DNA of 64,000 bases from IMG/VR virus record IMGVR_UViG_3300034050_000451, positions 186,001 to 250,000 of that record. One strand, 5' to 3'. Of the stretch, positions 11,146 to 32,863 are shown piece after piece. The first letter of the stretch is position 1. Every line of letters begins with the position of its first letter. Position numbers and translations under genes: made by a program. Under the pieces are notes generated by a model. It worked only from the letters and a program-made list of their open reading frames with translations. It had not been told where the DNA came from and ran no database searches.

Positions 11146-11787
11146 TTATATTTCTGGAAATAGTACTTTTTGCATAAAGTAGGTAGCCCTCTCTTCTCCA
11201 ATTTCCGTTTTCAATGCACCAAATGTACGAGGATTATCAGCTTGGTGTCTACAATATATGTTTTGGTTTTCTATAATAATTCTCAACTCATTTGAATCGG
11301 ATGTAATATCTACTTCACTTCTTAATTGTTCAATATATCGTTGAAATACCCCCCAAGCAGTTTCAAATATTTTCTCATATTCATCTTCAGTAGGTCTTAC
11401 TGCTATGAATTGTTCCGAAAATACCGATGCCCAATAAGGTAACTTTCTATCGGTGTTCCATTCAGTATTATGCCAATCTTCATCATAAAGGACTGGGGAA
11501 CAATCTATAAATGCTCCACTTATCTTTCCACTATTAGTACCACCAACTACATCAAATCCAAAGATTGGTGCTTTTGAGTTCTTATGTGGGAAACAAGTGA
11601 TGTGACAAACTGCAAGTGAACCTACAAAGTATCTCTCTACGTGAGCTAATCTGAAAATTGGTGATTCGTATCGGTAGTTCTCCCAACCATAATCATCAGT
11701 ATGGAGTTCTTTAACCCCATCGATTGATTCGATGAGGTTTTTAAACTTCTCACTATGATATGTTATACGTTCTACTAAATCGTACAT
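11146..11787 (-). CDS. ferredoxin-dependent bilin reductase (PcyA/PcyX-like)
   Basis: FRLAHVE, CHITCFP, PIFGFDVV, DCSP, LPYWASVFS and QNIYCRHQADNPRT...VLFP motifs. Confidence 0.88.
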   Translation of the reverse strand: MYDLVERITYHSEKFKNLIESIDGVKELHTDDYGWENYRYESPIFRLAHVERYFVGSLAVCHITCFPHKNSKAPIFGFDVVGGTNSGKISGAFIDCSPVLYDEDWHNTEWNTDRKLPYWASVFSEQFIAVRPTEDEYEKIFETAWGVFQRYIEQLRSEVDITSDSNELRIIIENQNIYCRHQADNPRTFGALKTEIGEERATYFMQKVLFPEI

Positions 11788-12287
11788 TTTTCTAATTCTT
11801 TAAAGATTTCAATCATAAAATCAAATCCTGCATTTACCTCATCTGCCCATTCATCTTTTTGAATAGCTCTGATTGAACCAGCACATTCCATCATATTTTC
11901 AAAATCATACATTTTACCTTGACCGGGTGTTTTCTCTTTCATCATCTGTCCACCAAACATAATTGCTAAGTAGTTAAGATAGATATGAGCATTTGCCTCA
12001 TCTTGTGTTAATCCTTTTAGATATTGAATATATGATTCGGTTGCTGAATCAGGTGAAACATCTGATACACCTAAGTATCCCAAATCCTCACTTACAGCTG
12101 ATACTCTCTTTAATCCCTCATTTGGAAATTCAAAGTTGTTTTCCAATGTTGAAAAGATTGCTAATTGTGATTTAAGATACTCACCATATTGAGATGCGGT
12201 TAATCTACCACTAAACATCAATCCGTTGAATGGCATTCTTTCAGCCAATTTGTGCTTTTCAGCAGTTGCTTCTTTTAAAGGTAACAT
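11775..12287 (-). CDS. heme oxygenase (HemO/Ho1-like)
   Basis: LKEATAEKH proximal His; AHIYLNYLAIMFGGQM distal helix. Confidence 0.9.
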   Translation of the reverse strand: MLPLKEATAEKHKLAERMPFNGLMFSGRLTASQYGEYLKSQLAIFSTLENNFEFPNEGLKRVSAVSEDLGYLGVSDVSPDSATESYIQYLKGLTQDEANAHIYLNYLAIMFGGQMMKEKTPGQGKMYDFENMMECAGSIRAIQKDEWADEVNAGFDFMIEIFKELEKCTI

Positions 12288-12288
12288 A

Positions 12289-12459
12289 TTATTTATCTTC
12301 AGTTAAAAATGTTAAAACTATATATGGTATTACTGCTGCCGGTCCTAAGACAACTAATAACGCTCTCCATAAAATTGGGTCTACTTTAGTGTGGTAACCC
12401 AAACCACCACAAATACCACTTAGGAATTTGTTCTTACTACTTCTATAAAATTTTCTCAT
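12289..12459 (-). CDS. pspC: PspC-domain membrane protein (56 aa, missing from ORF track)
   Basis: MRKFYRSSKNKFLSGICGGLGYHTKVDPILWRALLVV...YIVL. Confidence 0.85.
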   Translation of the reverse strand: MRKFYRSSKNKFLSGICGGLGYHTKVDPILWRALLVVLGPAAVIPYIVLTFLTEDK

Positions 12460-12469
12460 AATTTTGTTT

Positions 12470-12685
12470 TTATTTGTTATTTAATTTACCATCATCAAGT
12501 TGGGAATCTAAATTCCCAGCGTCTTGGTATGCATCGTATAATAATTCCAATGCTTTTTCAATTTTTGTTTGTATATCCGGATTAACTTCCGTAAGTGGAT
12601 GATTTAATATATGTTCATCAATTGTACAACATACTACATGAAGTCTATCCATTAATTCCAAATAGTGTCCATCGTTTATTTCCAT
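12470..12685 (-). CDS. hypothetical protein
   Basis: 71-aa ORF. Confidence 0.65.
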   Translation of the reverse strand: MEINDGHYLELMDRLHVVCCTIDEHILNHPLTEVNPDIQTKIEKALELLYDAYQDAGNLDSQLDDGKLNNK

Positions 12686-12918
12686 AAGTTTGTAATTTCA
12701 ATTATTATTTCTGTTTTGTTTTTATGTAATACATAACCACTCCATCTGTTATCCATTCTACATACCCTATTAAAGTTAAATACTTCAATTTCGTTACCAT
12801 CATACCAACCAGTAATTGAGTTTGGCTGATAATCTATTCCTAAGCTTTGTATTTTATCTTCTAAATATAATTTACGAACTTTGGATTCTAAATCATATAC
12901 CGATATATGAATTGTCAT
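12676..12918 (-). CDS. hypothetical protein
   Basis: 80-aa ORF. Confidence 0.6.
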   Translation of the reverse strand: MTIHISVYDLESKVRKLYLEDKIQSLGIDYQPNSITGWYDGNEIEVFNFNRVCRMDNRWSGYVLHKNKTEIIIEITNLWK

Positions 12919-12924
12919 TTTAAT

Positions 12925-13071
12925 TTATTTTTTAAAAATATCGGATAGTTTTTTACCTTCTTTTATAATTCTACCCGTTTGTTCATCCATCTCAGGTGCT
13001 TTCCACATATGGTAAGCGATAAATAAAAAATTAACTATCGTACAAATTCCAATAATTTTAAATATAATCAT
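12925..13071 (-). CDS. small membrane protein (48 aa, missing from ORF track)
   Basis: MIIFKIIGICTIVNFLFIAYHMWKAPEMDE... Confidence 0.6.
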   Translation of the reverse strand: MIIFKIIGICTIVNFLFIAYHMWKAPEMDEQTGRIIKEGKKLSDIFKK

Positions 13072-13098
13072 TATTTATGCTTTAATTGTTGGTTTTAA

Positions 13099-13659
13099 TT
13101 ATACTGCAGCGTATCTTAGTAAACATCCTATAAATCCATTTGGTCTATATTCTTCAGGATTATCTAATACTTTTTCTAAACGCTCTATTAAACTTTGTTT
13201 CAGCATCTCCTCATTGTTGTTAGTTGGAAAATCTTGTGCAAATTCAGGTGACCAAGTTAACGTGATACTTTGTGTAGGTTCGAATGTTTCTGGATTATAT
13301 ACAATAGGACCAAAAACACAACCATCTTTTACTGGTTTATATATTTCCATCGGGTCATACATTTTTGGAGTAAACATTATAGTGTAAACATACCCTACTT
13401 TACCCATATAAGGTGGTTCTTCAACATCTGACATTTTGTGAGTTTTCATAACAACTGCCTTTTCTCCATCTTCAGTCAAACCAGCTGGTAGGTCCATCCA
13501 TACTATCTTATCAAATCCTAAAGACTTGATTAATTCTGATTCTACTTGAATACGTTGTTCTTCAGTTAATTTAATAATAAATTCACTATCGAAGTATCCA
13601 TAAGTTTTATCTGCATCTCCGCAGATTGATAATAATTTTTCTGTTAAATTTGATTTCAT
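13099..13659 (-). CDS. hypothetical protein
   Basis: 186-aa ORF. Confidence 0.75.
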   Translation of the reverse strand: MKSNLTEKLLSICGDADKTYGYFDSEFIIKLTEEQRIQVESELIKSLGFDKIVWMDLPAGLTEDGEKAVVMKTHKMSDVEEPPYMGKVGYVYTIMFTPKMYDPMEIYKPVKDGCVFGPIVYNPETFEPTQSITLTWSPEFAQDFPTNNNEEMLKQSLIERLEKVLDNPEEYRPNGFIGCLLRYAAV

Positions 13660-13664
13660 AATTT

Positions 13665-14768
13665 TTAATTTGATAATGGTGCTTTGATTGCTGGATGTGA
13701 TTGATAATTTTCAATTTCAAATTGCGCAATACTTTGGTATTCTATATCTATTCCTGTTATAGGACAAGGATTGAATTTTAGCGTAGGTAACTCAAATGGT
13801 TTTCTACTAATTTGTTCTTTTGCTTGTTCAATGTGATTTAAATACAAATGTGTATCACCTAAATTTCCAATCAATTCATCAGGTATCATATTTACTTCTT
13901 TAGCAATGATTTCTAATAACAATCCATAAGATGCTATGTTGAATGGTAAACCTAAGAATGTATCTACTGAGCGTTGATTCCACATTAATGAGATTGCTCG
14001 AGTTGGAATACCCCAATCGTTCATTAATATCTCATTTGTATCAACATGAGCTGCAAACTTAGATTCTGGTCTTTGACCTAAACATACACCTATTCTCTCT
14101 TCATGGCTCAACTCTCTCGTATAAACTTGAAATCCATAATGACAAGGTGGAAGAACCATTTGGTCTAATTCACCTACATTCCAAGCATTAACCATTAATC
14201 GTCTTGAGTCTGGATTTGTTTTAAGGTCATTGATTAGGTTTTGTATTTGGTCTACACCACCTTTGTTAATCTCACCCGCTTCATGTGCCCACTTCCTCCA
14301 TTGCTTACCATAAATTGGTCCTAATTCACCGTATCTACTAGCAAACTCATCATCTAATTTAATTGTATATATAAATTCTTCTTGAGTCAAAAGTCTTATT
14401 TCATCCCCTACAACAAGTAGTAGTCTGTCATAAATCATATCATCTAAATCCCCAATGTCAGATTTTAACCACATCTTATCAACAGTATCAACGTAGTTTT
14501 TATAGGCATCACCATTCCAAATGTTACAACCATTATCAACCAAATACTTAATATTAGTATCACCCTTCAAAAACCATAGTAATTCAGTTACAATAGTTTT
14601 AAATGGCATCTTCTTAGTTGTTAGAAGTGGAAATCCATCTTTCATATTGTGTCTGATAGTATAACCAAATATTGACTTTGTGCCAGTACCAGTTCTATCT
14701 TTCTTATCAATACCATAATCTAAAATGGTTTGAAGTAAATCCTGATATTGTTTATCTATTTTATTCAT
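13665..14768 (-). CDS. thyA: thymidylate synthase
   Basis: DRTGTGT, LPPCH, QRSVDTFLGLPFN and GDTHLY motifs. Confidence 0.97.
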   Translation of the reverse strand: MNKIDKQYQDLLQTILDYGIDKKDRTGTGTKSIFGYTIRHNMKDGFPLLTTKKMPFKTIVTELLWFLKGDTNIKYLVDNGCNIWNGDAYKNYVDTVDKMWLKSDIGDLDDMIYDRLLLVVGDEIRLLTQEEFIYTIKLDDEFASRYGELGPIYGKQWRKWAHEAGEINKGGVDQIQNLINDLKTNPDSRRLMVNAWNVGELDQMVLPPCHYGFQVYTRELSHEERIGVCLGQRPESKFAAHVDTNEILMNDWGIPTRAISLMWNQRSVDTFLGLPFNIASYGLLLEIIAKEVNMIPDELIGNLGDTHLYLNHIEQAKEQISRKPFELPTLKFNPCPITGIDIEYQSIAQFEIENYQSHPAIKAPLSN

Positions 14769-14774
14769 ATCTTT

Positions 14775-15035
14775 CTATTCTTTTGTTGGTATTGTCCAAA
14801 TATGAATTGGAGTAAAATCACCTAAGTATGCTGATAGTACGTTAAACTCAACCCACTCAACAGCTTCCTCAAATGTCATATTTTCTTTATTCTCATCATA
14901 AACTAAGCATTCCATTTTATAGATATCATATATAACTCTACCACTATCGGAAATTCCAACAATAGCTTCATCCATATCATCCCATATATATGCGTCTGGG
15001 TTTACCTCATTAATTTTTTCTCTATTATAACTCAT
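14775..15035 (-). CDS. conserved phage protein
   Basis: DEAIVG...EEAVEWVEFNV..AY.G..TP motif. Confidence 0.75.
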   Translation of the reverse strand: MSYNREKINEVNPDAYIWDDMDEAIVGISDSGRVIYDIYKMECLVYDENKENMTFEEAVEWVEFNVLSAYLGDFTPIHIWTIPTKE

Positions 15036-15038
15036 AGT

Positions 15039-15320
15039 TTATTTTTTATTTGGTGTTTGTTTAGCTTTTTCTCTTTTACGTTTTTCATCCAACTTAGCGA
15101 ACGCATCATGTAACTCACCCAACTTACCTTTTTTCTCTAATGCTGCCTGCTTTTGTGCATCTTTATATGCTTTATCCCAACCAGCTGGATATTTAATCTC
15201 AACAGAAACAGGTCCATTTGTAGTTCTATCTAAATCATACTTCCAAATAGATATACAACCATCATCATCTTTATAGATACGTTCAAATTTACGAGGTTGG
15301 TTTGTTGCACTTATTGCCAT
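15039..15320 (-). CDS. hypothetical protein
   Basis: 93-aa ORF. Confidence 0.7.
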   Translation of the reverse strand: MAISATNQPRKFERIYKDDDGCISIWKYDLDRTTNGPVSVEIKYPAGWDKAYKDAQKQAALEKKGKLGELHDAFAKLDEKRKREKAKQTPNKK

Positions 15321-15330
15321 ATTCTAATTT

Positions 15331-15990
15331 TTAATCCCACCAGCCCCTCATATCCGAACCATCAAACCATTCGTTCCATGTATCAGTTTTTAACATTTCT
15401 TCAGCTGATTTTGTAGTTTTGAATTTTTTATATCCATTTATATCCTGTCCTTCGAAGATTTTCCAAAGTTCTTTCCACTCTTGCGCTTCTAACTTTCTAG
15501 CTCTATCAAAAACTTTACGATTGTGTTTCTTTTCTGATGGAGTTTCATTATCTACTAATACATAAAGTTTTTCATTATTTTCTCCAAATGGATTATCAGT
15601 AGTTTCACCAGTTTCTTCAAATTGCCAATCTCTCATATAAAGAACCCCCAATTCCCCTTCAGCCATATCGATGTATTTATCATCGTTAATGTTTTTAAGA
15701 ATTTGGATTGCTCTTTGCATTTTGGCAATCTTCTTATCACGTGATTCTCTAACCTCTATACCATCATGCATCTTTGCTTCCATTATTTCTAATGAAGTTT
15801 GTAATGCCTCTAATGTGAATCGGTAATCATACCATCTATGGTTCCATAACATTTTACGGAATCTATAAATGTTTTTAAAAAATACCGGTATCTTATAACG
15901 AACTACTTCGTAAGTTTTATACCACCAACTTTCATGTCTAATCAGAGTTTTTAAGCTATCTCCAAAACTATCTGCAAATCCTACTTTCAT
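15331..15990 (-). CDS. conserved hypothetical phage protein
   Basis: 219 aa; ends MRGWWD. Confidence 0.75.
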   Translation of the reverse strand: MKVGFADSFGDSLKTLIRHESWWYKTYEVVRYKIPVFFKNIYRFRKMLWNHRWYDYRFTLEALQTSLEIMEAKMHDGIEVRESRDKKIAKMQRAIQILKNINDDKYIDMAEGELGVLYMRDWQFEETGETTDNPFGENNEKLYVLVDNETPSEKKHNRKVFDRARKLEAQEWKELWKIFEGQDINGYKKFKTTKSAEEMLKTDTWNEWFDGSDMRGWWD

Positions 15991-15993
15991 AAT

Positions 15994-16248
15994 TTATTTT
16001 ATTAATTCAAATACGTGCCATACAAAGTATCCATCAATGTATGTTTCAATATATTTCATACCTTCATCAATATCCCAACCAGTACCCACAATGCAAATGT
16101 GTCTTTCTTCTACTTTCTCTTTAGGATTTACTACGGCCCAAAGACATGGAAATTCACCATGCAATTTAACTGTTAGGATTTCAGCACCTTTAGGTAATTT
16201 TAAAGTGCAGTCTTGTGAAGTTACCGGATATTTATAAATTGTTTTCAT
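15994..16248 (-). CDS. conserved phage protein
   Basis: MKTIYKY...LPKGAEIL...GTG...VWHVFE. Confidence 0.75.
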   Translation of the reverse strand: MKTIYKYPVTSQDCTLKLPKGAEILTVKLHGEFPCLWAVVNPKEKVEERHICIVGTGWDIDEGMKYIETYIDGYFVWHVFELIK

Positions 16249-16251
16249 ATT

Positions 16252-16662
16252 TTATACTGTATGTTCTATTTGTACTCTTACACAATTTTGTGGTAATCTA
16301 CTAACGTGTCTATAATTGTTAATGTATCCCATCATATTTGCTGAACCAATTGCGTTTGCTGAATGTATTACAACATCAACAACAGCATGTCCGTCCAACC
16401 ATTGATTAACCAACCATTTAGTGCAATCCATTCCAGTCTTTTCCTTAATATTATCATAGTTTAATTCATAATTGTGATATACATTCTTATGCCACTCTGC
16501 CATTGCAGTATCTCCTAAATCGTGGTCCAATGAAATCAAGTCAATATTTTCCAATCCAATGTAAGTAACTGTATCAATAAATTGTTCATAGTTTCTAACA
16601 ACTACCCAAGATTCTTTATCTACTGGAGTTCTTACATCATCTAAGTAAATTCTTTTTTTCAT
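16252..16662 (-). CDS. cyclic-phosphate-processing receiver-domain protein
   Basis: IYLDDVR, ISLDHDLG, TGMD and HSANAIG motifs. Confidence 0.8.
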   Translation of the reverse strand: MKKRIYLDDVRTPVDKESWVVVRNYEQFIDTVTYIGLENIDLISLDHDLGDTAMAEWHKNVYHNYELNYDNIKEKTGMDCTKWLVNQWLDGHAVVDVVIHSANAIGSANMMGYINNYRHVSRLPQNCVRVQIEHTV

Positions 16663-16673
16663 AATTTAATTTT

Positions 16674-16880
16674 TTATCTTACGATATTAAATGAGTTAAT
16701 CTTATTACAATTTGTACATACGATGGTATCAATTCTACCCCTTACACAACTATCATGCTCCCAAAGTTCAACTAATGTGGGTGTAGAACATCCACATTTA
16801 TCATCTTGAACTGAACTTTTACCATTCCAATGTTTAAGTTGTGGGTCAACAGACCACTCTTCTTTTAATTTACTTACCAT
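16674..16880 (-). CDS. small Cys-rich (zinc-ribbon-like) protein (start revised to 16880)
   Basis: CGC...CTNC. Confidence 0.55.
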   Translation of the reverse strand: MVSKLKEEWSVDPQLKHWNGKSSVQDDKCGCSTPTLVELWEHDSCVRGRIDTIVCTNCNKINSFNIVR

Positions 16881-16881
16881 A

Positions 16882-17226: not shown

Positions 17227-17268
17227 ATATTTTAGAGTTTTAAGTTATTAATAATCAAATATACGAAA

Positions 17269-18669: not shown

Positions 18670-19995
18670 TTAATTGTCTAAATAAATCCAATCGGAATGT
18701 TTATCCGATTTTAGTTTCTGTCTTACTCTTTCAGATGAGATACCAAAATGGTTACCAGCATCTTCCATTGAATAGAATTCAATTCCATCACAACTTATAA
18801 CTGGTATTTCTAATCTAATATTATTATCCCACATATCCATCATTTCACCATAGGTAATATCATTACTATCCACCCGTTTCCAATGTCTATATTTGGGATT
18901 GTTTGATTCAATATAATTTCTAGCAATTTGTTCGGTGAAATCTCCACCAATTAAATCTGCTATTTGTTTTGGGTTCTCAAACGGAACTCCATCTACTTCG
19001 TATTTTATATGTGGGTTGGTTTCTTCACCAATGATTTGCCACTCTTTGTAAGATGATTTAGTACTTCTACATCTTCTCTCTACTTCAGATGCAACTAACT
19101 TATCTGCATCCACATCAATTGCCGCATGTCTAAATGATAGGTATTCCTTCCCATCTACTTTACACATAGGTTCACCACCTTCAATCTCAATAGTTGCGAT
19201 ATCAGGGTTTCCTTTTACAAAAATTAGAATGTTTTGATGAACTGATGGTATTTTACGATTTCTATCAAAGTAAGTTTTACCAACTCGTGAAGCTTGGTGT
19301 TGAGAATTGAATAGAATCATATCATTATAGAATTCCATTCCAGCTGATTCCAACATATCTATGGTTTTACGAACCAAACCTCTATATCTACCTTTAGAAT
19401 ACTTACCAGTTACGGATGGTTCTCTAACTTCAGATACTACAATCCCAAAGAATCGGTTATCTTTTAGTTTTTGAACTGATTTTAGGAGTATTGATTCATA
19501 TACTTTATCAAATGAATCCACATCCATATTGGAAATATCATTCACATCATCAGTATAAATCTCCAAATCGTAGTAAGGTGGGCATGTAAATACAAAATCA
19601 AATGATTCATCGGCTACCTTGTCCAATTCCTCATTCGAATCACCATTAATCCATAAGGGTTTTTTTGATTGCTCTTTGTTGGCTTTTACTTGTGATTTGG
19701 ATAAATCAATTCCAACGTATCTTCGGTTCATCTCTTCACATACGATACCTCTCACACTACCACCAGCGAATGGGTCTAATACCATTCCACCTTTGGGTGA
19801 GAACCAATCGTACATCAATTCACAAAGTACTGGGTCAAATACGGAAACTGAATTGGGTGTATCCCAAAAGATAGTTTTGGATTGAGTATCCTCTCTACCT
19901 AATTCAGATTGGATACCATAATTAGTAATCCAATATTCCTTTCTTTGCTTCCATTCCTTTGTTCTAGTATCTAATACTGAAAAGGGTGTAAACAT
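18670..19995 (-). CDS. amino-DNA methyltransferase fused to three NUMOD1-like HTH repeats (start revised to 19995)
   Basis: LDPFAGGS, TCPPY and C-terminal VDGxxYxSxxxAA repeats. Confidence 0.75.
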   Translation of the reverse strand: MFTPFSVLDTRTKEWKQRKEYWITNYGIQSELGREDTQSKTIFWDTPNSVSVFDPVLCELMYDWFSPKGGMVLDPFAGGSVRGIVCEEMNRRYVGIDLSKSQVKANKEQSKKPLWINGDSNEELDKVADESFDFVFTCPPYYDLEIYTDDVNDISNMDVDSFDKVYESILLKSVQKLKDNRFFGIVVSEVREPSVTGKYSKGRYRGLVRKTIDMLESAGMEFYNDMILFNSQHQASRVGKTYFDRNRKIPSVHQNILIFVKGNPDIATIEIEGGEPMCKVDGKEYLSFRHAAIDVDADKLVASEVERRCRSTKSSYKEWQIIGEETNPHIKYEVDGVPFENPKQIADLIGGDFTEQIARNYIESNNPKYRHWKRVDSNDITYGEMMDMWDNNIRLEIPVISCDGIEFYSMEDAGNHFGISSERVRQKLKSDKHSDWIYLDN

Positions 19996-20014
19996 ATAAC
20001 ATATTTTATAAACA

Positions 20015-20052
20015 CAAAGATACAAAAAAAGCTTGGTATATCCAAGCTTTTC
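20015..20052 (-). promoter_or_regulatory. promoter overlapping a terminator-like hairpin
   Basis: AAAAGCTTGG-ATATA-CCAAGCTTTT plus TGTATCTTTG. Confidence 0.65.
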
Positions 20053-20587: not shown

Positions 20588-21187
20588 TTAGTGAATATGT
20601 TTAACTTCATGCCCTTCCCAACCTTTAGTTGGTTTTGAATTAGGAAAATCAAAACATTTCCACTTCTTTTGTTTTGAAAAATAGATATGTTTAACCATTG
20701 ATGTTGGAACATGTCCTCCGGTTGGTAGGACTTTATGTCCTTTTCCAAATACCAACTCAACTTTAACTTTTAGTTTTTCGGTATCATCCCATTTTCTTTC
20801 CTGCTCTTCTAACATTCTCCACTCACCTCTATTCATATATTGGTCTTGTAGTGCACAATTCAAATATGAAAACGTTTGTTTTAAATTTTCTATATTATCA
20901 GAAAATGTAGCTGCTGGTGCTAAGTGACCCTTATCATATACATTTGTACGATAATCATTAGCATCTGATGTATGTACATCCTTTTCAGTATAAAAATCCA
21001 TAGAACCTCTATTCACATTTGTAGCTCTATTAGTTGATTCATATGTTAACCAAAGTGGTTGTTCGAATACCTCTGAATATAGTACTTCAAATATTGGGGT
21101 TTTTACCTTAACTTCATGTCGGTGAGAATCACCTGTAAATGAAAATAATATTAAAATAAATGGGATAAATAAACTTAATCTTTTCAT
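20588..21187 (-). CDS. DNA/RNA non-specific endonuclease (NucA/EndoG family) with signal peptide
   Basis: YDKGHLAPA and NCALQ..MNRGEW..LE motifs; hydrophobic N-terminus. Confidence 0.9.
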   Translation of the reverse strand: MKRLSLFIPFILILFSFTGDSHRHEVKVKTPIFEVLYSEVFEQPLWLTYESTNRATNVNRGSMDFYTEKDVHTSDANDYRTNVYDKGHLAPAATFSDNIENLKQTFSYLNCALQDQYMNRGEWRMLEEQERKWDDTEKLKVKVELVFGKGHKVLPTGGHVPTSMVKHIYFSKQKKWKCFDFPNSKPTKGWEGHEVKHIH

Positions 21188-26162: not shown

Positions 26163-26369
26163 CTTTATCTTTTTTACGAATGCTTGTATATTATAGTAAT
26201 TCATATTTCAAATATACAAAAAATAATTCAAATAACCTAATTTCTTTCCAAAATCTTTTTTAATTGTGATTCTTTCAATAGTTTCTTTGGTTCTTGTTTT
26301 TTGGATTTGTCCTCTTCCAATGGAATTCGATAGTTCTTTACTAACTTTTCCATCCAATCTTTGGTGTCT

Positions 26370-27464: not shown

Positions 27465-27796
27465 CGTAATATGAATTTTAATACATTGTATTTTATTTTG
27501 TGGAATTTATTGAATGTTCGAGGTGACCATACTTTGTGGTCTTGCAACTCATCCAATTGCTTTGCTAAAGTATTCCTTAAAAAGAACAAATCACCCTCCC
27601 ATCTAAATCTAAATCGGTTTGTGTAATTTGGTAAGAAACATAAAAATTTAAATAAATAATAAGAATGCAATCCCTTTGTTATTTTCAGAATTTCAACACC
27701 CCATTGTTCATAAGGTCCGTTGATGTATATATTAAGTAATTTTATATTTAAATTGAACTTTCGCATTTTCCAATCTATTGTTTGGAGTATTTTCAT
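27461..27796 (-). CDS. hypothetical protein
   Basis: 111-aa ORF coupled to the ligase. Confidence 0.6.
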   Translation of the reverse strand: MKILQTIDWKMRKFNLNIKLLNIYINGPYEQWGVEILKITKGLHSYYLFKFLCFLPNYTNRFRFRWEGDLFFLRNTLAKQLDELQDHKVWSPRTFNKFHKIKYNVLKFILR

Positions 27797-27820
27797 AGTT
27801 AATCTTTTTTTTTGAATTTA

Positions 27821-27850
27821 GAGATTCAGGGGGGTATTACCCCCCATCTC
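27821..27850 (-). terminator. hairpin downstream of the AAA gene
   Basis: GAGAT-GGGGGG-TAATA-CCCCCC-TGA-ATCTC. Confidence 0.6.
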
Positions 27851-27868
27851 ATTTATAATTGATTAACC

Positions 27869-29077
27869 TTAGAACATTGGGATTTCATCTACTAACTCTT
27901 CTTTTTGTTCGGTAAAAAGAGCTTCTGCTGATGTATCTTTAACATATTTTTGAACCAGTTGTTTCACATAAGTTCTTTCAGAATCTACACCACCATCATT
28001 AGAGAAGAATGGGAAGATTGAAATTTCAGCTGATTCGAATAAATCGAATCCATCATAAATTAATCCAGCCATTTCAACACTAGCTCTCGTCGATACCATA
28101 GCGGTAACTTTACCAGAATCACTCATCGATTGAGTTCGAGTGTGGTGAGCGATTTCAGCGATTGCTTTCAAATCATAATCATTAACCTCAGGGAACATAA
28201 ACTTTAACAATCCAAATTCCTGCTCATCATTTAGAACATCCATTTCGATAGTTACGAAACGGTCTAAGATAGCCCTATCGATTACCCTAGTCGAAGTATA
28301 TTCAGAACCTATGTTAGCGGTAGCGATAAAGGTAACACCTTCAGCCACTTTAACAATTGGTGAACCTTCAGCCTCATCCAAACGTAAGTAACGTTGTCCA
28401 CCATCTAAAACGGTCATCAAAATGTTCCAAGCATCAGGGTGAGCTCTACTCAACTCATCTAATAGAATCACAGCGTTTGGAGTTTTAATTGCTTTAACGA
28501 ATGCCGATTCAGCGAAGAAAGTTCCTTTGTTTTTATCAAAGTGAGTATTACCAATCAAAGTAGCACGAGGGTCTTGCGTTGCTCCTAAGTTGAAGTAGAA
28601 ATCAGGTCGGTCAAGTGCTTTAACCAATGCTTTAGCTGCCATTGTTTTACCACAACCAGCAGGTCCAGTCATCATAATGTTTTTAGCTCTAACAGCTGAA
28701 CGAACTAAGTATTTCCACTTTAGAGGTGTCATCACCAATTCAATTGGTTTCAAATCAATTGAACTATTGTGAATGAAATCTTTGATTGCGTTATGGTCAC
28801 CTTTATCTTCAAATTGAACACCACCATTATCGGTATTCATTGGGGAAACTAAGTTATTATAAACTTCCATTCCCACTTTTCGGAAAACCTTCTTACCATT
28901 CTTTTGAACGAATGCCTGAAGAGCCAATCCCTGCTCAAATGCATCTTTACGAGTACCGGTTCCGATACCCATTGTACCAACTTTTTGACCTTTAGTGTCA
29001 ATTAACTTAAATGAGTTACCAAAAGCTTCTACTTTGTAAACCTCATTTCCTACGAATCCAATTTTTAAATCTTTCAT
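27869..29077 (-). CDS. MoxR-family AAA+ ATPase (CbbQ/NirQ/CobS-like)
   Basis: GPAGCGKT, LLDELSR, ATAN, DRAILDRF and STR motifs. Confidence 0.92.
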   Translation of the reverse strand: MKDLKIGFVGNEVYKVEAFGNSFKLIDTKGQKVGTMGIGTGTRKDAFEQGLALQAFVQKNGKKVFRKVGMEVYNNLVSPMNTDNGGVQFEDKGDHNAIKDFIHNSSIDLKPIELVMTPLKWKYLVRSAVRAKNIMMTGPAGCGKTMAAKALVKALDRPDFYFNLGATQDPRATLIGNTHFDKNKGTFFAESAFVKAIKTPNAVILLDELSRAHPDAWNILMTVLDGGQRYLRLDEAEGSPIVKVAEGVTFIATANIGSEYTSTRVIDRAILDRFVTIEMDVLNDEQEFGLLKFMFPEVNDYDLKAIAEIAHHTRTQSMSDSGKVTAMVSTRASVEMAGLIYDGFDLFESAEISIFPFFSNDGGVDSERTYVKQLVQKYVKDTSAEALFTEQKEELVDEIPMF

Positions 29078-29087
29078 TTTTATTTAT

Positions 29088-29157
29088 TTTAGGGTTTTAA
29101 TTAATTACTCTCTCAATTACCTGTCTAATATACGAACAATTTCTGATATAAACAAGC
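29088..29157 (-). promoter_or_regulatory. early promoter plus conserved leader
   Basis: Near-identical to 31877-31943. Confidence 0.7.
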
Positions 29158-29182
29158 TTTTTGCCAATTATTTTTGCTTTTT

Positions 29183-29407
29183 TTAATAATAAAATCGACT
29201 ATAATAACCTAATGTACCAGTATCCGAATCTGCGTTGTCTATAAACCCAAATCCTTTGTAATTATTGGTATTGAATAGGATTCTTTCAATGGTGGTGGCA
29301 ATGCCAGCCTTAAATGCCACTGTAGCGAACTCATCGGTTCGTTTTAGTTGTTCATTAGCCCAATCCAACATAGTACTAACTTCAATCGTTTTTTTACTTT
29401 TAGCCAT
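29183..29407 (-). CDS. hypothetical early protein
   Basis: 74-aa ORF with its own promoter (29456-29488). Confidence 0.7.
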   Translation of the reverse strand: MAKSKKTIEVSTMLDWANEQLKRTDEFATVAFKAGIATTIERILFNTNNYKGFGFIDNADSDTGTLGYYSRFYY

Positions 29408-29529
29408 AATTTAGGGGTTTTTTAAGTGATTTAATCTATCTATCAATCTTATACTCAAATATACAAAAAAGACTTGAGATAAACAAGCCTTTTTCTAATT
29501 ATTTTCAATAAAGTTATTAACAATTTGAA

Positions 29530-31647
29530 TTATTTTGTTAAGAACAACTCATTTATTGTTTTAGTTATTTGAGCCACATTTGTTACATCGATTTTCTTAG
29601 CTCCCTTACCATACATCTTCTTAAATCCTCGAGATGGTTCGGTTGTATTTGACCACTCATCTACAAAGTAAGAAAGAGTTTTAATTCCCATTCCTTCGAT
29701 TTGTTTAACCATTTTACGAGTGTGTTCGAATGCCGGTTCACCACTATATCGGAAAGAACCACCTTCAAAGTAAGGTTCACCATCTGAGATGTTTAGGAAG
29801 TAAGAATCCATATCGTTATTAGAACCTAAGAAATTCTTCATAATTGCCTCAAAACATAATCCCTCAGGAGTAGTACCACCAGCTCTAAGTGCCGGAAACA
29901 TTTGTTTTACCTTTGAGAACTTATCAATACGAGAATCGTAAGCCATAACCACATATGGTGAATTACCATGTGTAGTTCTGAATGAAACCTGAATTGATAG
30001 GTTTTGAATCATATCAACTGCTTTACAAAGTGCAACCACATTGGTTAAGGTATTAACCCATTTAGAACCACCCATTGAACCACTAGCATCAATTGAGATA
30101 TGTAGGTTAGCTTTTTTGTAAGAATCGGTTTCCATATATTGGAACACATTTTCATTACCAAATCCTAATGATGAAATCATTCGTTTATCAATACTACCAT
30201 TCTTTTGGCGATTGAACACCGTAGAACGGTCCTCACCTCTAACCTGAAGTTTCTTTCCTAATATAGTTCCAATTCGAATTCCATTTTGAACTTCAGTCTC
30301 ATAATGCATTTTAATCAATCCAGTCTCTTCAGGTTTGTACCAATTGTTATCAGTCATTGGGAACATTTGATTTTCAAATAATGATTTGGTAAGTTTCTTA
30401 ACTACTATACAAGTTGTACCCTTTCGAGAGTTACCCCAACCATCATTAACACCAGCACCAACTGAAGTAATTTCTGAACCACTTTCCTCAATTGCGTTAA
30501 CATTATTTGCTTCAGTTCGAGTGATAGATTTTTTACGAATTTCACCTCTCATAAACTCTTTCTGCTTTTGAATTTTCTTTTTAAGGAGGTTTTTTTGGTT
30601 ATCACTAAGAGTTAATTTATTTGATTCCTTACCACCTTCAGTTGATTCAGTTGCTTCACCACGCTCAACACCTTCAGGCATTTCAATTTCCATAGAAGAA
30701 CCACCAGTTGGTTTACTATCCATATCACCCGTCATTGGAGATGAACCATCCAATGAATCCATTAAATCATCAAATTCAGAATCACTCATTTCACGTGATT
30801 CATTTGAACTACCATTACCATTTCCATTTTGATTTTGATTTTCTTCAGAATCACCCTGTCCACCAGTACCCTCACCTTCACCATCAGATAATGATGGTAA
30901 GTTATTTAGAATAATTTGAAAAACTTCCATAGCCACATTAAATGTATCTAAGGTAGATTTCAATCGGTTAATAGTACCTAAACCAATTGTTTTATAGATT
31001 TCGGTGAAACCCGGTAAAGCGTTAAGGTTTGTATTTTTGTTGTGAATGTTAATGATTCGGAACATATAAGAATCAATTGTTGATTCAGTATATTCATCTG
31101 AAGTTAATCCCTTATCAATTAATGGGTCATTAAAGTATTTATCGTACATTGAACGATAGTAATCTCTATAACCCGGAGCGGAGGTAAAAACGTAGTAATC
31201 AATTCTACGGTCCTCAACCACATTCCAAATATCTTTGATAGTTGAAATTGGATTAGTAATACCTTTTTTGATTGCCCCATCTTTAATATGAGATGGAACC
31301 AAATTGTAAATATCACCTAATGTTTTAAAATCTGAAAGTTTAATGTGAGAACCTTCGTGCAATGCTAATCCAACAGCCACATCAAAATCCTTAGGGTCTA
31401 CGATTTGTGAACCAATTACCACAGTCTTACCATCGGTATAGGAATCACCACGTGTACTAAATTTAACAGGAATTGAATCGTTGGTAACGATATTAACGAA
31501 GTTGGAGATAGCTCGTTTAGAAGCGGCTAATTTGTAAAGGTCATGTGATTTACGTTCCACATCATTCATTTGATTAACAATGATGTCATCATCTTCCCAG
31601 TCCTTTAACCAATAAGAAGAATTTCCGTACTTTTTAAATTTACTCAT
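29530..31647 (-). CDS. vWA-domain protein with N-terminal HExxH domain (CobT-like MoxR partner)
   Basis: LHEGSH, NVVEDRRI, acidic linker, IDASGSM MIDAS, GTTPE and ISDG. Confidence 0.88.
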   Translation of the reverse strand: MSKFKKYGNSSYWLKDWEDDDIIVNQMNDVERKSHDLYKLAASKRAISNFVNIVTNDSIPVKFSTRGDSYTDGKTVVIGSQIVDPKDFDVAVGLALHEGSHIKLSDFKTLGDIYNLVPSHIKDGAIKKGITNPISTIKDIWNVVEDRRIDYYVFTSAPGYRDYYRSMYDKYFNDPLIDKGLTSDEYTESTIDSYMFRIINIHNKNTNLNALPGFTEIYKTIGLGTINRLKSTLDTFNVAMEVFQIILNNLPSLSDGEGEGTGGQGDSEENQNQNGNGNGSSNESREMSDSEFDDLMDSLDGSSPMTGDMDSKPTGGSSMEIEMPEGVERGEATESTEGGKESNKLTLSDNQKNLLKKKIQKQKEFMRGEIRKKSITRTEANNVNAIEESGSEITSVGAGVNDGWGNSRKGTTCIVVKKLTKSLFENQMFPMTDNNWYKPEETGLIKMHYETEVQNGIRIGTILGKKLQVRGEDRSTVFNRQKNGSIDKRMISSLGFGNENVFQYMETDSYKKANLHISIDASGSMGGSKWVNTLTNVVALCKAVDMIQNLSIQVSFRTTHGNSPYVVMAYDSRIDKFSKVKQMFPALRAGGTTPEGLCFEAIMKNFLGSNNDMDSYFLNISDGEPYFEGGSFRYSGEPAFEHTRKMVKQIEGMGIKTLSYFVDEWSNTTEPSRGFKKMYGKGAKKIDVTNVAQITKTINELFLTK

Positions 31648-31649
31648 AT

Positions 31650-31720
31650 TTTTAGGGTTTTAATTAATTTATCTCTTAATCTTATACTCAAATATACGAC
31701 AAATACCTGAGATATCCAAA
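31650..31720 (-). promoter_or_regulatory. early promoter plus conserved leader
   Basis: TTTGG...GTCGTATATTTG followed by AAGAGAT...AAACCCTAAAA. Confidence 0.7.
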
Positions 31721-31731
31721 TAAAATTGAAG

Positions 31732-31872
31732 TTATTTTTGATAAAATTTATCAATCTCTAATTTGGCTTGTTTTAGTGTCTTTTTAGCTTTGGTTTTTTT
31801 ACCACTAAAAAGTAGTTCCATCGACTCGATTAACAATCGTCTGTGGGTTGGAAGGGTGTTTTTTGGTTTCAT
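31732..31872 (-). CDS. small basic early protein (46 aa, missing from ORF track)
   Basis: MKPKNTLPTHRRLLIESM...; follows a promoter-leader block. Confidence 0.6.
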   Translation of the reverse strand: MKPKNTLPTHRRLLIESMELLFSGKKTKAKKTLKQAKLEIDKFYQK

Positions 31873-31970
31873 ATATTAGGGGTTTGATTAATTACTCTCT
31901 CAATTACCTGTCTAATATACGAATAATATTTGATATAAACAAGGGTTTTCTTAAAAATCTTACGATTTTC

Positions 31971-32129
31971 TTAAAAATCTTCCTCAAATGTAGATGGAAA
32001 ATCTGAATCTAAGTCTGCTAATAGAAATAATAACTCTTTTCTAGCATCCTCTACCTGTTTCCACTCTTCATATGATATTGCCTCCTCTAAACCATCAATA
32101 ATATCTTGAATTCTTTCACTTATATCCAT
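31971..32129 (-). CDS. small acidic protein (52 aa, missing from ORF track)
   Basis: MDISERIQDIIDGLEEAIS... Confidence 0.6.
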   Translation of the reverse strand: MDISERIQDIIDGLEEAISYEEWKQVEDARKELLFLLADLDSDFPSTFEEDF

Positions 32130-32176
32130 AATAATGTTTTTATTTATATGGGTTTAAATATAAGATATTTGAAAAA

Positions 32177-32863
32177 TTAGTGATTTGCAACTTTTGAGTA
32201 GATATATGGACCTGTTTTTGGCCCCCATATTTGAGTTCCAGAATCATCCCAACCCCTCTCCCAACTAATAACTTCGTGTTGGTATATTACAAACTCAGTT
32301 GTAGTGTAGGTTGCTCCCTTAAATGAGCCTTTACAATCCGATTCATTGGTACTACCTCTAAATGCCCCTAAGTTATCTTTGTATATCTTTATATCACACC
32401 CCACTTTATATGGTAGGTCATAGATGGCAAGTGCCTTTAGTTTGTTGGTATCAACTTTAAATGTTATATCATCTAAATTAAACTTACCAGACGCAACTTT
32501 GGTATCAGTTAGTACATTCCAAAAATCAACTTCATTTGGTATTGAGAATATGTTTAAACCAATGTAATAATCATCAATTTGGTATATTGCGTATATACGT
32601 TGTCTATATGGATAGTACTTACCCTCAATTAGTTCACCTTGCTGAGTATAGATTAGAGTCGCTTCATCATGTGTATCATACTCTACAGTCCTTACTAATA
32701 CATCACCTCTGGTGGTATCAATGGTTGAATGGTATTTAGTTGAAAACCTACCTGTAATTGAATGTATGTACTTATCAAAATCAAGTGAGTCCAATTTGGT
32801 TTGAGAATATCCAAATATTGGTAGTAATACTACGGAAATGGTTATAAAAATAAACTTTTTCAT
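32177..32863 (-). CDS. CpcT/CpeT-family bilin chromophore lyase with signal peptide
   Basis: PYRQRIY, GC, FRGST...C, GATY and SWERGWD..G.QIWG...GPY motifs. Confidence 0.85.
   Translation of the reverse strand: MKKFIFITISVVLLPIFGYSQTKLDSLDFDKYIHSITGRFSTKYHSTIDTTRGDVLVRTVEYDTHDEATLIYTQQGELIEGKYYPYRQRIYAIYQIDDYYIGLNIFSIPNEVDFWNVLTDTKVASGKFNLDDITFKVDTNKLKALAIYDLPYKVGCDIKIYKDNLGAFRGSTNESDCKGSFKGATYTTTEFVIYQHEVISWERGWDDSGTQIWGPKTGPYIYSKVANH

What the first reader, a model, noticed from the sequence alone, without database searches (positions are those of the whole stretch)
11146..32863. Bilin pathway (heme oxygenase, bilin reductase and CpcT/CpeT lyase) in a phage of an apparently non-photosynthetic host
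Seen: coupled heme oxygenase (11775-12287) and ferredoxin-dependent bilin reductase (11146-11787), and 20 kb away a T-type lyase (32177-32863) with a signal peptide. Known: HO plus PebS/PcyA and CpeT occur in cyanophages, and HO plus PcyX in phages of non-cyanobacterial hosts. All host cues here point to Bacteroidota, and no phycobiliprotein or phytochrome is visible in the window. Inference: the phage makes a bilin and may attach or carry it to an unknown, possibly extracytoplasmic, acceptor (photosensing, photoprotection or iron release). The lyase is unlinked, so it could be functionally independent.
Basis: partly seen in the sequence, partly recalled or inferred. Interest (0 to 1): 0.8.

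Follow-up and report, generated by a model that had tools for sequence, protein, structure and literature searches.

The report
Phage bilin genes plus unrelated exported barrel
A ~270-kb lake phage that most likely infects Bacteroidota carries a known kind of two-gene module that turns heme into a blue bilin pigment, while the supposed "lyase" 20 kb away is an exported barrel protein that a close relative has lost without losing the pigment genes.

Summary
The three genes are real and lie at the stated coordinates. Heme oxygenase and the bilin reductase overlap by 13 nt. They form the standard viral HO-FDBR cassette: HO sits directly upstream of the FDBR in 71 of 80 viral loci.

The reductase is not PcyX. 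It keeps the PcyA catalytic Glu/His/Asp and falls in a separate, all-Glu viral clade. The predicted product is therefore phycocyanobilin, as shown biochemically for the freshwater phage CB_2.

The host is very probably Bacteroidota. The genome is syntenic with Flavobacterium phage immuto, and the exported protein follows the Bacteroidetes Q-rule.

The "T-type lyase" has the CpcT/CRL fold and motifs but carries a Sec signal peptide. It belongs to an all-phage clade of a secreted DUF1001 family common in Bacteroidota, whose cellular members show no link to HO/FDBR.

It shares a contig with the cassette in three phage lineages. However, a close syntenic relative keeps HO-FDBR and lacks DUF1001 at the exact site, and another lineage has DUF1001 with no cassette in 26.7 kb.

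Verdict: two independent accessory modules. The cassette is a known kind in a new host group. The exported barrel is unexplained and is not a classical lyase.

The parts
11775..12287 (-). Heme oxygenase, compact 170-aa viral type
   Evidence: PF01126 E 2e-12. The proximal His12 aligns with HO-1 His25, and the distal GGQ motif (G112, G113, Q114) is present. His12, G112 and G113 are invariant in 60 unique viral HOs of 168-206 aa.
11146..11787 (-). Ferredoxin-dependent bilin reductase, PcyA-type; its start overlaps the HO stop by 13 nt
   Evidence: PF05996 E 4.5e-23. Best PDB hits are PcyX 5OWG (2.7e-18) and Nostoc PcyA (1.1e-17). E51/H62/D79 match PcyA Glu76/His88/Asp105 and are invariant in the family. 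It sits in an all-Glu clade with 100/99 support. The best NCBIfam model is PcyA, at 95 bits, below the cutoff of 206.
12289..12459 (-). PspC-domain 56-aa membrane miniprotein, 1 nt upstream of HO (context, local only)
   Evidence: PF04024 E 2.2e-14. Outside the window phage's own contigs, it is conserved upstream of HO only in L017.
10826..11140 (-). 104-aa protein directly after the FDBR, ending in a UVR-like EEYExCA helix with an invariant Cys
   Evidence: The same family follows the FDBR in L022, L023, L024 and L178. The AF2 model has pLDDT 86, with no PDB fold match. The Atlas places it among generic viral ~100-aa families.
10524..10784 (-). 86-aa paralog-like small protein with the same C-terminal motif
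   Evidence: Homologs follow the FDBR in L016, L017 and L202.
8614..10518 (-). GroES (10222-10518) and GroEL (8614-10215), downstream end of the tight gene array that contains the cassette
   Evidence: PF00166 and PF00118. The same HO-FDBR-small ORF-GroES-GroEL order occurs in L202.
32177..32863 (-). Exported DUF1001 (CpeT/CpcT-family) beta-barrel: signal peptide residues 1-20, mature protein from Gln21
   Evidence: PF06206 E 9.4e-22. AF2 model pLDDT 89.6. Foldseek hits: CRL 6LIX 7e-11, CpcT-PCB 4O4S 1e-9, phage CpeT 5HI8 9e-6. The family profile scores CpcT at 6e-30 and CRL at 3e-29. It falls in an all-phage clade.
32860..34353 (-). 497-aa ORF whose stop overlaps the DUF1001 start by 4 nt (context)
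   Evidence: Its C-terminal half (230-464) is 53% identical to the 271-aa ORF in the same position in L006/L180. PHROG 13607, function unknown.
27869..31647 (-). 705-aa VWA protein (29530-31647) and MoxR-type AAA ATPase (27869-29077), downstream neighbours of DUF1001 (context)
   Evidence: Weak CobT_C and VWA hits. AAA_5/GvpN-like. They were used as synteny anchors.

Best explanation
The interval holds two independent accessory modules of a ~270-kb freshwater jumbo phage of Bacteroidota.

Module 1 is PspC-HO-FDBR. It acts in the cytoplasm. Heme oxygenase opens host heme to biliverdin IXalpha, releasing Fe2+ and CO. The PcyA-type reductase then uses host ferredoxin for a four-electron reduction of biliverdin, most likely to phycocyanobilin. 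That the genes encode these enzyme families with intact catalytic residues is shown. The product and the physiological purpose are inferred. The purpose could be iron release or heme turnover, with the reductase pulling the product-inhibited HO reaction forward, or it could be supply of a bilin signal.

Module 2 is a DUF1001 beta-barrel exported through Sec and SPase I to the periplasm. It follows the Bacteroidetes Q-rule. It belongs to a phage-specific clade of a secreted family that is widespread in Bacteroidota. It keeps the CpcT/CRL pocket motifs, so it may bind a tetrapyrrole or another hydrophobic ligand. It is not a phycobiliprotein lyase, and the cassette does not require it.
For: Enzyme identity and catalytic residues.

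The cassette is a mobile two-gene unit. HO lies directly upstream of the FDBR in 71 of 80 viral loci, at least 579 viral stretches carry an FDBR, and no other neighbour is conserved.

PcyA-type, not PcyX: Asp at the Glu51 site is confined to a 15-row clade that includes Pelagibacter phage Mosig, while the window sits in a 42-row all-Glu clade. PcyA needs Glu76/His88/Asp105, and PcyX lacks the Glu (PMC10151467). The CB_2 phage enzyme, which lacks Asp55, makes PCB (PMC11480375).

Host: 18 of 106 ORFs match Flavobacterium phage immuto at 21-75% (most 35-75%) amino-acid identity, partly in syntenic blocks, and thyA DNA is 81-93% identical over short stretches. Cellular DUF1001 relatives are mostly Bacteroidota. 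Gln21 is invariant after the signal peptide, matching the Q-rule (PMC5837995).

Independence of the modules:
- Contig IMGVR_UViG_3300025879_001499 is syntenic over 41 kb. It has HO-FDBR at 65% identity but no DUF1001, and the insertion site is occupied by other ORFs. L195 also lacks DUF1001 at this site.
- The L008/L187 phage has DUF1001 but no HO/FDBR in 26.7 kb, nor upstream of GroES.
- Eighty cellular loci have no HO/FDBR within 6 kb and no conserved neighbourhood.
Against: DUF1001 and HO-FDBR lie on the same contig in all three phage lineages with long enough contigs: the window (20 kb apart), L178 (10 kb) and IMGVR_UViG_3300042448_001702 (55 kb apart, DUF1001 only 34% identical).

The barrel keeps the CpcT Tyr65 equivalent (Y86), a Glu at the Asp163 position (E202) and the Cys116/Cys137 pair (C156/C177). 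Its next structural neighbours are heme-binding nitrobindins.

In one relative, DUF1001 lies 3 kb from a phage glutamyl-tRNA reductase.

The rest of the 270-kb genome, about 206 kb, was not searched for a bilin acceptor or a ferredoxin.

The host is inferred, not shown. The product is inferred from residues and one characterised analogue whose place in my tree I could not determine.
Confidence: 0.66

Rival explanations
1. One reading: a three-gene pathway. HO and FDBR make a bilin, and the exported T-type lyase-like protein carries or attaches it to an extracytoplasmic acceptor for photosensing, photoprotection or pigmenting of the envelope or virion.
For: The genes share a contig in three phage lineages. 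The CpcT/CRL fold and motif residues are retained. In vitro PCB binding by CRL is attributed to Wang et al. 2020 in PMC11606413.
Against: The compartments do not match: HO and FDBR need cytoplasmic heme and ferredoxin, while DUF1001 is exported. A close syntenic relative keeps the cassette without DUF1001. Another lineage has DUF1001 with no cassette in 26.7 kb. None of 80 FDBR loci has DUF1001 within 10 kb. Cellular homologs are unlinked to HO/FDBR. All phage DUF1001 form one clade, so co-occurrence can reflect shared descent. No acceptor is seen in the window.
Confidence: 0.13
2. DUF1001 is a periplasmic tetrapyrrole (heme) scavenger or carrier that feeds a phage-driven heme/iron economy. 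Periplasmic capture would be followed by uptake, cytoplasmic HO releasing iron, and the FDBR clearing biliverdin. This would be a loose functional theme rather than an obligate pathway.
For: After the T-type lyases, the nearest folds are heme-binding nitrobindins. In the L008/L187 relative, DUF1001 lies within about 6 kb of a phage glutamyl-tRNA reductase and a phage-encoded TonB-dependent-receptor-like outer-membrane barrel. Iron supply is a role already discussed for the cassette (PMC11480375).
Against: No heme-ligand residue has been identified. The nitrobindin matches are weak (E 4e-3 to 1e-2, TM 0.4-0.57). Cellular homologs have no conserved heme or iron neighbours. The same discordant presence/absence cases apply.
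Confidence: 0.1
3. DUF1001 is an envelope factor unrelated to tetrapyrroles. It would act in the periplasm on outer-membrane biogenesis or surface-glycan remodelling, by analogy with plant CRL/SSG7, whose DUF1001 domain faces the intermembrane space and binds the TamB homolog TIC236/SSG4.
For: CRL is the best structural hit and, for the single sequence, the best sequence hit in the PDB. CRL/SSG7 topology and TamB-homolog binding are reported in PMC11606413. The gene sits in an envelope-glycan neighbourhood (WavE, NUDIX, APS kinase, glycosyltransferases) and is translationally coupled to the 497-aa ORF.
Against: This is analogy only. The upstream partner is conserved in only two lineages. No TamB-like gene is seen in the window.
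Confidence: 0.1
4. The phage infects a cyanobacterium, and the genes serve phycobilisome maintenance as in cyanophages.
For: All three gene families are classic cyanophage auxiliary genes.
Against: DUF1001 finds no match in 50,697 phage records, cyanophage CpeT included. The FDBR is only 25-28% identical to cyanophage PcyA and lies in a different clade. Synteny is with a Flavobacterium phage. The signal peptide follows the Q-rule. No psbA, hli or phycobiliprotein genes are in the window. GC is 30-35%.
Confidence: 0.01

Closest known systems
Freshwater phage CB_2 (Crystal bog pmoC-phage 2) vHemO + PcyA (Wegner et al. 2024, PMC11480375)
   Same: It is a viral heme oxygenase next to a PcyA/X-like reductase that lacks the PcyX Asp55. 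It comes from a freshwater phage of a non-cyanobacterial host. It was shown to make biliverdin and then phycocyanobilin.
   Different: The CB_2 host is predicted to be Methylocystis (Alphaproteobacteria), and its cassette is accompanied by alaS. Here the host is Bacteroidota-like and no alaS is in the window. I could not place the CB_2 sequence in my tree.
Marine phage hemO-pcyX cassette (Ledermann et al. 2016/2018; PDB 5OWG; Pelagibacter phage Mosig)
   Same: It has the same two-gene order, HO then FDBR, in phages of heterotrophs. PcyX is the best PDB hit, and Mosig is the best hit among isolated phages at 32.5% identity.
   Different: PcyX has Asp at the PcyA-Glu76 position and makes phycoerythrobilin. 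The window enzyme has Glu and sits in a separate, strongly supported clade.
Cyanobacterial CpcT and cyanophage PhiCpeT (T-type phycobiliprotein lyases; PDB 4O4O/4O4S, 5HI8)
   Same: They share the Pfam family, the calyx beta-barrel fold, the PYR(Q/L)R Tyr, the acidic residue in the S-x-D/E-R-G motif, and the Cys pair.
   Different: Those lyases are cytoplasmic, have no signal peptide, and act on phycobiliproteins. The window protein is exported, there is no phycobiliprotein substrate in the window, and tblastn finds no similarity to any cyanophage CpeT.
Secreted ~210-aa DUF1001 proteins of Bacteroidota, Ignavibacteriota and relatives (uncharacterised)
   Same: They share the length, the signal peptide, and the PYRQRxY, GC, GST..C and SW(D/E)RGW motifs. 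They occur in at least 554 species genomes.
   Different: The phage proteins form their own clade, separated by a long, fully supported branch. The cellular genes are solitary, with no HO/FDBR nearby.
Plant CRL / rice SSG7 (DUF1001 domain, PDB 6LIX)
   Same: CRL is the best structural match. The domain faces a periplasm-equivalent compartment. In vitro PCB binding is reported, though it is unrelated to the known phenotype.
   Different: The plant proteins are membrane-anchored in plastid envelopes and partner with the TamB homolog TIC236/SSG4. No such partner was tested here.
pre-PcyA / BBAG gene clusters of heterotrophic bacteria (Rockwell et al. 2023, PMC10151467)
   Same: They also combine HO and an FDBR in non-photosynthetic organisms.
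   Different: pre-PcyA enzymes lack the Glu76/His88 equivalents and sit with Fe-S, V4R and globin genes. The window enzyme has the full PcyA triad, and none of those neighbours is present.

Membership tests
Canonical heme oxygenase (PF01126) | Profile match above the curated cutoff | tested here: met
   47.8 bits against a cutoff of 23.
Canonical heme oxygenase (PF01126) | Proximal heme-ligand His and distal-helix Gly-Gly | tested here: met
   His12 aligns with HO-1 His25, and G112/G113 align with Gly143/Gly144. All three are invariant in 60 viral HOs. The HO-1 Asp140 position is Ile here and varies across the viral family.
Canonical heme oxygenase (PF01126) | Heme to biliverdin IXalpha activity | not testable with these tools
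   Activity has been shown only for analogous viral HOs (PMC11480375).
PcyA (phycocyanobilin:ferredoxin oxidoreductase) | FDBR fold/profile match | tested here: met
   PF05996 at 82.5 bits against a cutoff of 31.
PcyA (phycocyanobilin:ferredoxin oxidoreductase) | Catalytic Glu76, His88 and Asp105 (Synechocystis numbering) | tested here: met
   Glu51, His62 and Asp79 align with them. They are invariant in 19 family members and across the 42-row clade.
PcyA (phycocyanobilin:ferredoxin oxidoreductase) | NCBIfam equivalog score (NF002760) | tested here: not met
   95.4 bits against a cutoff of 206. It is still by far the best FDBR model. The enzyme is therefore PcyA-like, not a curated equivalog.
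PcyA (phycocyanobilin:ferredoxin oxidoreductase) | Product is phycocyanobilin | not testable with these tools
   Inferred from the residues and from CB_2.
PcyX (phage phycoerythrobilin synthase) | Asp55 in place of PcyA Glu76 | tested here: not met
   The window has Glu51 where 5OWG and Mosig have Asp.
PcyX (phage phycoerythrobilin synthase) | Membership of the PcyX clade | tested here: not met
   The Asp clade of 15 rows has 99/91 support and excludes the window. The window's clade has 100/99 support.
T-type phycobiliprotein lyase (CpcT/CpeT) | Pfam CpeT profile and lipocalin-like barrel fold | tested here: met
   78.2 bits against a cutoff of 21. Foldseek hits 4O4S at 1e-9 and 5HI8 at 9e-6.
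T-type phycobiliprotein lyase (CpcT/CpeT) | Proposed catalytic Tyr65 and Asp163 (their roles are recalled from Zhou et al. 2014; the paper is not held) | tested here: inconclusive
   Tyr86 aligns with Tyr65. Glu202, not Asp, aligns with Asp163. Both positions are family-wide hallmarks that are also present in the non-lyase CRL.
T-type phycobiliprotein lyase (CpcT/CpeT) | Cytoplasmic location together with bilin synthesis and the apoprotein | tested here: not met
   A Sec signal peptide with an invariant +1 Gln is present in all homologs.
T-type phycobiliprotein lyase (CpcT/CpeT) | A phycobiliprotein substrate encoded by the phage or host | tested here: not met
   None is found in the window. 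The host cues are Bacteroidota. The remaining ~206 kb of the genome was not examined.
T-type phycobiliprotein lyase (CpcT/CpeT) | Consistent co-occurrence with bilin synthesis genes | tested here: not met
   A discordant +/- case and a probable -/+ case exist among relatives. Cellular homologs are unlinked.
Secreted DUF1001 family of Bacteroidota | About 210 aa, N-terminal signal peptide, shared motifs | tested here: met
   Alignment A3. The window protein matches all 80 cellular loci.
Secreted DUF1001 family of Bacteroidota | Nested within the cellular sequences | tested here: not met
   A 17-row clade, all in phage context, is separated from 93 cellular rows by a branch of length 1.59 with 100% SH-aLRT support (contexts).

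The most novel reading that the evidence does not exclude
The phage-specific clade of exported DUF1001 barrels is a periplasmic tetrapyrrole-binding protein, for bilin or heme. It would work with the HO-PcyA cassette and, in relatives, with a phage glutamyl-tRNA reductase and a phage TonB-dependent-receptor-like porin. On this reading, jumbo phages of freshwater Bacteroidota rewire tetrapyrrole and iron traffic across the host envelope. That would make it a non-photosynthetic, extracytoplasmic use of the T-type lyase fold.
Probability: 0.12. Interest if true: 0.72.

Novelty: new variant of a known kind. Interest (0 to 1): 0.42.

Why it matters
HO-FDBR cassettes in phages of heterotrophs are an open puzzle, because nobody knows what a bilin is for in a non-photosynthetic virocell. 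This case adds three things.

First, it extends the cassette to abundant lake phages that very probably infect Bacteroidota. This host group is not mentioned in the held literature on these genes.

Second, it shows that a large viral clade carries the full PcyA catalytic triad. Phycocyanobilin, rather than the "pink" PcyX product, may therefore be the common viral output in fresh water.

Third, it warns that "CpeT/CpcT lyase" annotations outside cyanobacteria name a fold, not a function. The family is mainly a secreted protein of Bacteroidota, with a separate phage clade whose role is unknown.

The natural presence/absence variants found here give ready-made comparisons for experiments.

Tried and rejected
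- The genome-contig scan with the close-homolog alignment A1 found nothing, because the patterns were too strict. The wider alignment A3 had no stretch conserved enough to search with. The cellular subset A4 worked.
- I first took absence from the top-80 FDBR list to mean absence of the gene. That was wrong. The 71-kb relative has a 65%-identical FDBR and is not in that list. The list is truncated and was not used for absence claims.
- RNA evidence is weak. Only relatives about 90% identical appear as contigs in metatranscriptome libraries, which neither proves transcription nor concerns this phage.
- The 104-aa ORF after the FDBR was considered as a candidate bilin acceptor because of its conserved Cys. 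The model is confident but has no fold match, and the Atlas places it among generic viral small proteins. It remains unresolved and is not claimed.
- The 497-aa ORF coupled to DUF1001 has no Pfam, NCBIfam or PDB match.
- The bS21 Atlas search gave only viral clusters and no host signal. GroEL is too conserved to assign a host.
- The structural papers on CpcT and PhiCpeT are not held. The roles of Tyr65 and Asp163 and the Cys116-Cys137 pairing rest on my memory.
- A cyanobacterial host was rejected.
- pre-PcyA membership was rejected because the full Glu/His/Asp triad is present.

Full report
**Observation.**
- The 213-aa protein from 11146-11787 matches the ferredoxin-dependent bilin reductase profile (E 4.5e-23).
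- The 170-aa protein from 11775-12287 matches heme oxygenase (E 2e-12).
- The 228-aa protein from 32177-32863 matches the CpeT/CpcT family (E 9.4e-22).

All three score above Pfam's curated cutoffs. HO and FDBR overlap by 13 nt. They sit in a tight array: PspC-domain miniprotein, HO, FDBR, a 104-aa ORF, an 86-aa ORF, GroES, GroEL. The third protein starts with a classic Sec signal peptide.

**What the genome is.** The window is part of a ~270-kb phage genome (JGI contig of 270,754 bp; IMG/VR contig of 270,865 bp). It recurs in many assemblies and in at least 14 lake-water metagenome runs. GC content is 30-35%. Other genes include bS21, GroES/GroEL, ThyA, a DNA ligase and a large glycosyltransferase block.

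**Host.** The evidence points to Bacteroidota but is indirect.
- Eighteen of 106 minus-strand ORFs have homologs in the first 100 kb of Flavobacterium phage immuto. Identities run from 21% to 75%, most between 35% and 75%, and a syntenic glycosyltransferase block is included. Short thyA-region DNA matches are 81-93% identical.
- The exported protein's cellular relatives are overwhelmingly Bacteroidota and allied phyla.
- The residue after the predicted signal-peptide cleavage site is an invariant Gln. This is the Bacteroidetes "Q-rule" (PMC5837995).
- A relative encodes a 1093-aa CarboxypepD_reg plus outer-membrane-barrel protein; that this domain combination is typical of Bacteroidota is my own knowledge, not a tool result.
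- Nothing points to cyanobacteria.

I put a Bacteroidota host at about 0.8. It is inferred, not demonstrated.

**The HO-FDBR cassette.** HO keeps the proximal His (His12, aligned with HO-1 His25) and the distal Gly-Gly-Gln motif. His12, Gly112 and Gly113 are invariant among 60 distinct viral HOs. Those HOs are 168-206 aa long, so the short length is normal for this viral type.

The FDBR is about equally similar to PcyX (5OWG, 69.7 bits) and to Nostoc PcyA (67.7 bits). Its Glu51, His62 and Asp79 align with PcyA Glu76, His88 and Asp105. They are invariant in its family. The literature states that these three residues are critical in PcyA, and that Glu76 is absent from PcyX and from pre-PcyA enzymes (PMC10151467).

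In a 76-sequence tree the window falls in a 42-row clade that is entirely Glu (support 100/99). Asp at that position is confined to a separate 15-row clade containing Pelagibacter phage Mosig (99/91). Cyanophage PcyA is far away. Wegner et al. showed that the freshwater phage CB_2 enzyme, which lacks the PcyX Asp55, is a true PcyA that makes phycocyanobilin, and that its HO is active (PMC11480375). I therefore predict biliverdin IXalpha and then phycocyanobilin, with confidence about 0.65 for the product. The enzyme does not reach NCBI's PcyA equivalog cutoff (95 against 206 bits). It is PcyA-type by active site, not a curated PcyA.

**How common the cassette is.** A pattern scan found at least 579 FDBR-encoding stretches in IMG/VR. 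In the 80 loci fetched, an HO gene lies immediately upstream in 71. No other gene is widely conserved beside them. The cassette is a mobile two-gene unit of a known kind. What is new here is the host group and the size of the all-Glu clade. The held literature on these genes never mentions Bacteroidota or Flavobacterium.

**The "lyase".** The AlphaFold model is confident (pLDDT 89.6). It matches Arabidopsis CRL (E 7e-11), CpcT with bound PCB (1e-9) and cyanophage CpeT (9e-6). Nitrobindins follow weakly. A family profile aligns full-length to CpcT (6e-30) and CRL (3e-29).
- CpcT Tyr65 corresponds to Tyr86.
- CpcT Asp163 corresponds to Glu202 (Asp in the cellular homologs).
- CpcT Cys116 and Cys137 correspond to the invariant Cys156 and Cys177.

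So the fold and the pocket motifs are kept. They are family-wide features, however, and are shared with CRL. According to PMC11606413, CRL's PCB binding is unrelated to its biology, and its DUF1001 domain faces the intermembrane space and binds a TamB homolog.

The protein is exported, which conflicts with a cytoplasmic lyase role. It finds no match at all among 50,697 phage records, including cyanophages that carry cpeT. Instead it belongs to a ~210-aa secreted family found in at least 554 species genomes, mostly Bacteroidota, Ignavibacteriota and relatives. In 80 such loci there is no HO or FDBR within 6 kb and no conserved neighbourhood.

The phage versions form one clade of 17 rows. Every member I examined lies in phage context. 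A long, fully supported branch separates them from 93 cellular rows (contexts).

**Is it linked to the cassette?**

*For a link.* In each of the three phage lineages with long enough contigs, both are on the same contig.
- The window: 20 kb apart.
- L006/L178: 10 kb apart, with DUF1001 55%, FDBR 60% and HO 53% identical to the window's.
- IMGVR_UViG_3300042448_001702: 55 kb apart, with DUF1001 only 34% identical.

*Against a link.*
- These phages are all relatives, and the DUF1001 genes form one clade. Shared descent explains the co-occurrence.
- The decisive case is IMGVR_UViG_3300025879_001499. It is syntenic with the window over 41 kb (VWA protein 72%, AAA ATPase 89%, GroEL 74-75% identical). 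It has HO, FDBR, the 86-aa ORF, GroES and GroEL in the same order, with HO and FDBR 65% identical to the window's. Yet seven diverse DUF1001 queries find nothing in it. The exact site (497-aa ORF, DUF1001, 52-aa ORF, VWA in the window) holds other ORFs instead.
- A second relative, L195, also lacks DUF1001 at that site.
- Conversely, the L008/L187 phage has DUF1001 (63% identical) but no HO/FDBR in 26.7 kb or upstream of its GroES. L203 lacks the cassette upstream of GroES.

Both genes are therefore variable accessory genes, and the cassette persists without the barrel. I conclude that they are independent modules (confidence about 0.66). A loose thematic link through tetrapyrroles is not excluded. 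In L008/L187, DUF1001 lies 3 kb from a phage glutamyl-tRNA reductase (GlutR_N 7e-33).

**Mechanism, with status marked.**
- Shown from sequence: two enzyme families with intact catalytic residues, translationally coupled, and a third protein with a signal peptide and a CpcT/CRL-type barrel.
- Inferred: heme is opened to biliverdin, Fe2+ and CO, and then reduced by four electrons to phycocyanobilin using host ferredoxin. No ferredoxin gene is seen in the window.
- Open: the purpose. Candidates are iron release or heme turnover, with the FDBR relieving product inhibition of HO, or a bilin signal for a host phytochrome or globin-type acceptor. The literature leaves this open too.
- The barrel most likely acts in the periplasm on a hydrophobic ligand or an envelope partner. 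A classical lyase role fails three tested defining features: compartment, substrate and co-occurrence.

**Limits.**
- About 206 kb of the genome was not examined.
- The host and the product are inferences.
- The RNA-library contigs are ~90%-identical relatives and do not prove transcription.
- The pattern-based scans are incomplete.
- The cellular DUF1001 sample was chosen with one subfamily's patterns, so nearer cellular relatives of the phage clade may exist.
- The roles of the CpcT residues are from memory, because the papers are not held.

**Verdict.** The cassette is a known kind in a new host group, and it is PcyA-type rather than PcyX. The "lyase" is an exported DUF1001 barrel of a phage-specific clade, probably independent of the cassette. 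Interest is moderate.

Noticed in passing
window 41411-41677 (-): A phage-encoded ribosomal protein bS21 (PF01165). Its nearest Atlas clusters are all viral.
   Followed up: partly
window 27869-29077 (-) and 29530-31647 (-): A MoxR/GvpN-type AAA ATPase and a 705-aa VWA protein with a weak CobT_C hit form a CobS/CobT-like pair immediately downstream of DUF1001. Homologs occur in an uncultured 484-kb phage (LR756508) and in Microcystis phage Mel-JY01. In cyanophage P-SSM4, pcyA sits next to cobS.
   Followed up: partly
window 10826-11140 (-) and 10524-10784 (-): Two small proteins directly after the FDBR end in a UVR-like EEYExCA helix with an invariant Cys. The 104-aa type follows the FDBR in four other loci (L022-L024, L178), i.e. 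two further lineages, and the 86-aa type in L016, L017 and L202. The model is confident but has no fold match.
   Followed up: partly
window 12289-12459 (-): A 56-aa PspC-domain membrane miniprotein ends 1 nt before the HO start. Apart from the window phage's own contigs, the same arrangement is seen only in L017.
   Followed up: partly
window 32860-38832 and 48600-62424 (-): An envelope-glycan gene set is present: WavE (35486-36235), NUDIX (34670-35056), APS kinase (38362-38832), and many glycosyltransferases, an epimerase and an aminotransferase. Part of it is syntenic with the immuto glycosyltransferase block. By eye only, the N-half of the 497-aa ORF looks sulfotransferase-like.
   Followed up: partly
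L008 13923-14927 and L187 5770-9051 (ENA KRAE22 scaffold_1270): A related phage contig encodes a glutamyl-tRNA reductase (GlutR_N 7e-33; C5 pathway of tetrapyrrole synthesis) 3 kb from its DUF1001. It also encodes a 1093-aa CarboxypepD_reg plus outer-membrane beta-barrel protein, TonB-dependent-receptor-like, flanked by phage genes on both sides.
   Followed up: partly
window 20588-21187 (-): A DNA/RNA non-specific endonuclease (PF01223, 1.5e-19) carries an N-terminal signal peptide. Homologs are the most frequent extra neighbour in FDBR loci, at 16 of about 80.
   Followed up: no
window 18670-20025 (-): An N6/N4 DNA methyltransferase domain is fused to an I-TevI-type DNA-binding domain.
   Followed up: no
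window 13665-14768 (-): ThyA is 367 aa. It is 93% nucleotide-identical over 147 nt to the thyA of Flavobacterium phage immuto, the only near-DNA match of the window to any isolated phage.
   Followed up: no
L184 1-1519 (JGI 3300042967 contig): Another DUF1001-bearing phage contig carries a 549-aa B12-binding radical-SAM protein. No HO/FDBR is found in its 16 kb.
   Followed up: no
window 52-124 (-): A tRNA-Asn(GTT) gene, the only tRNA in the window.
   Followed up: no
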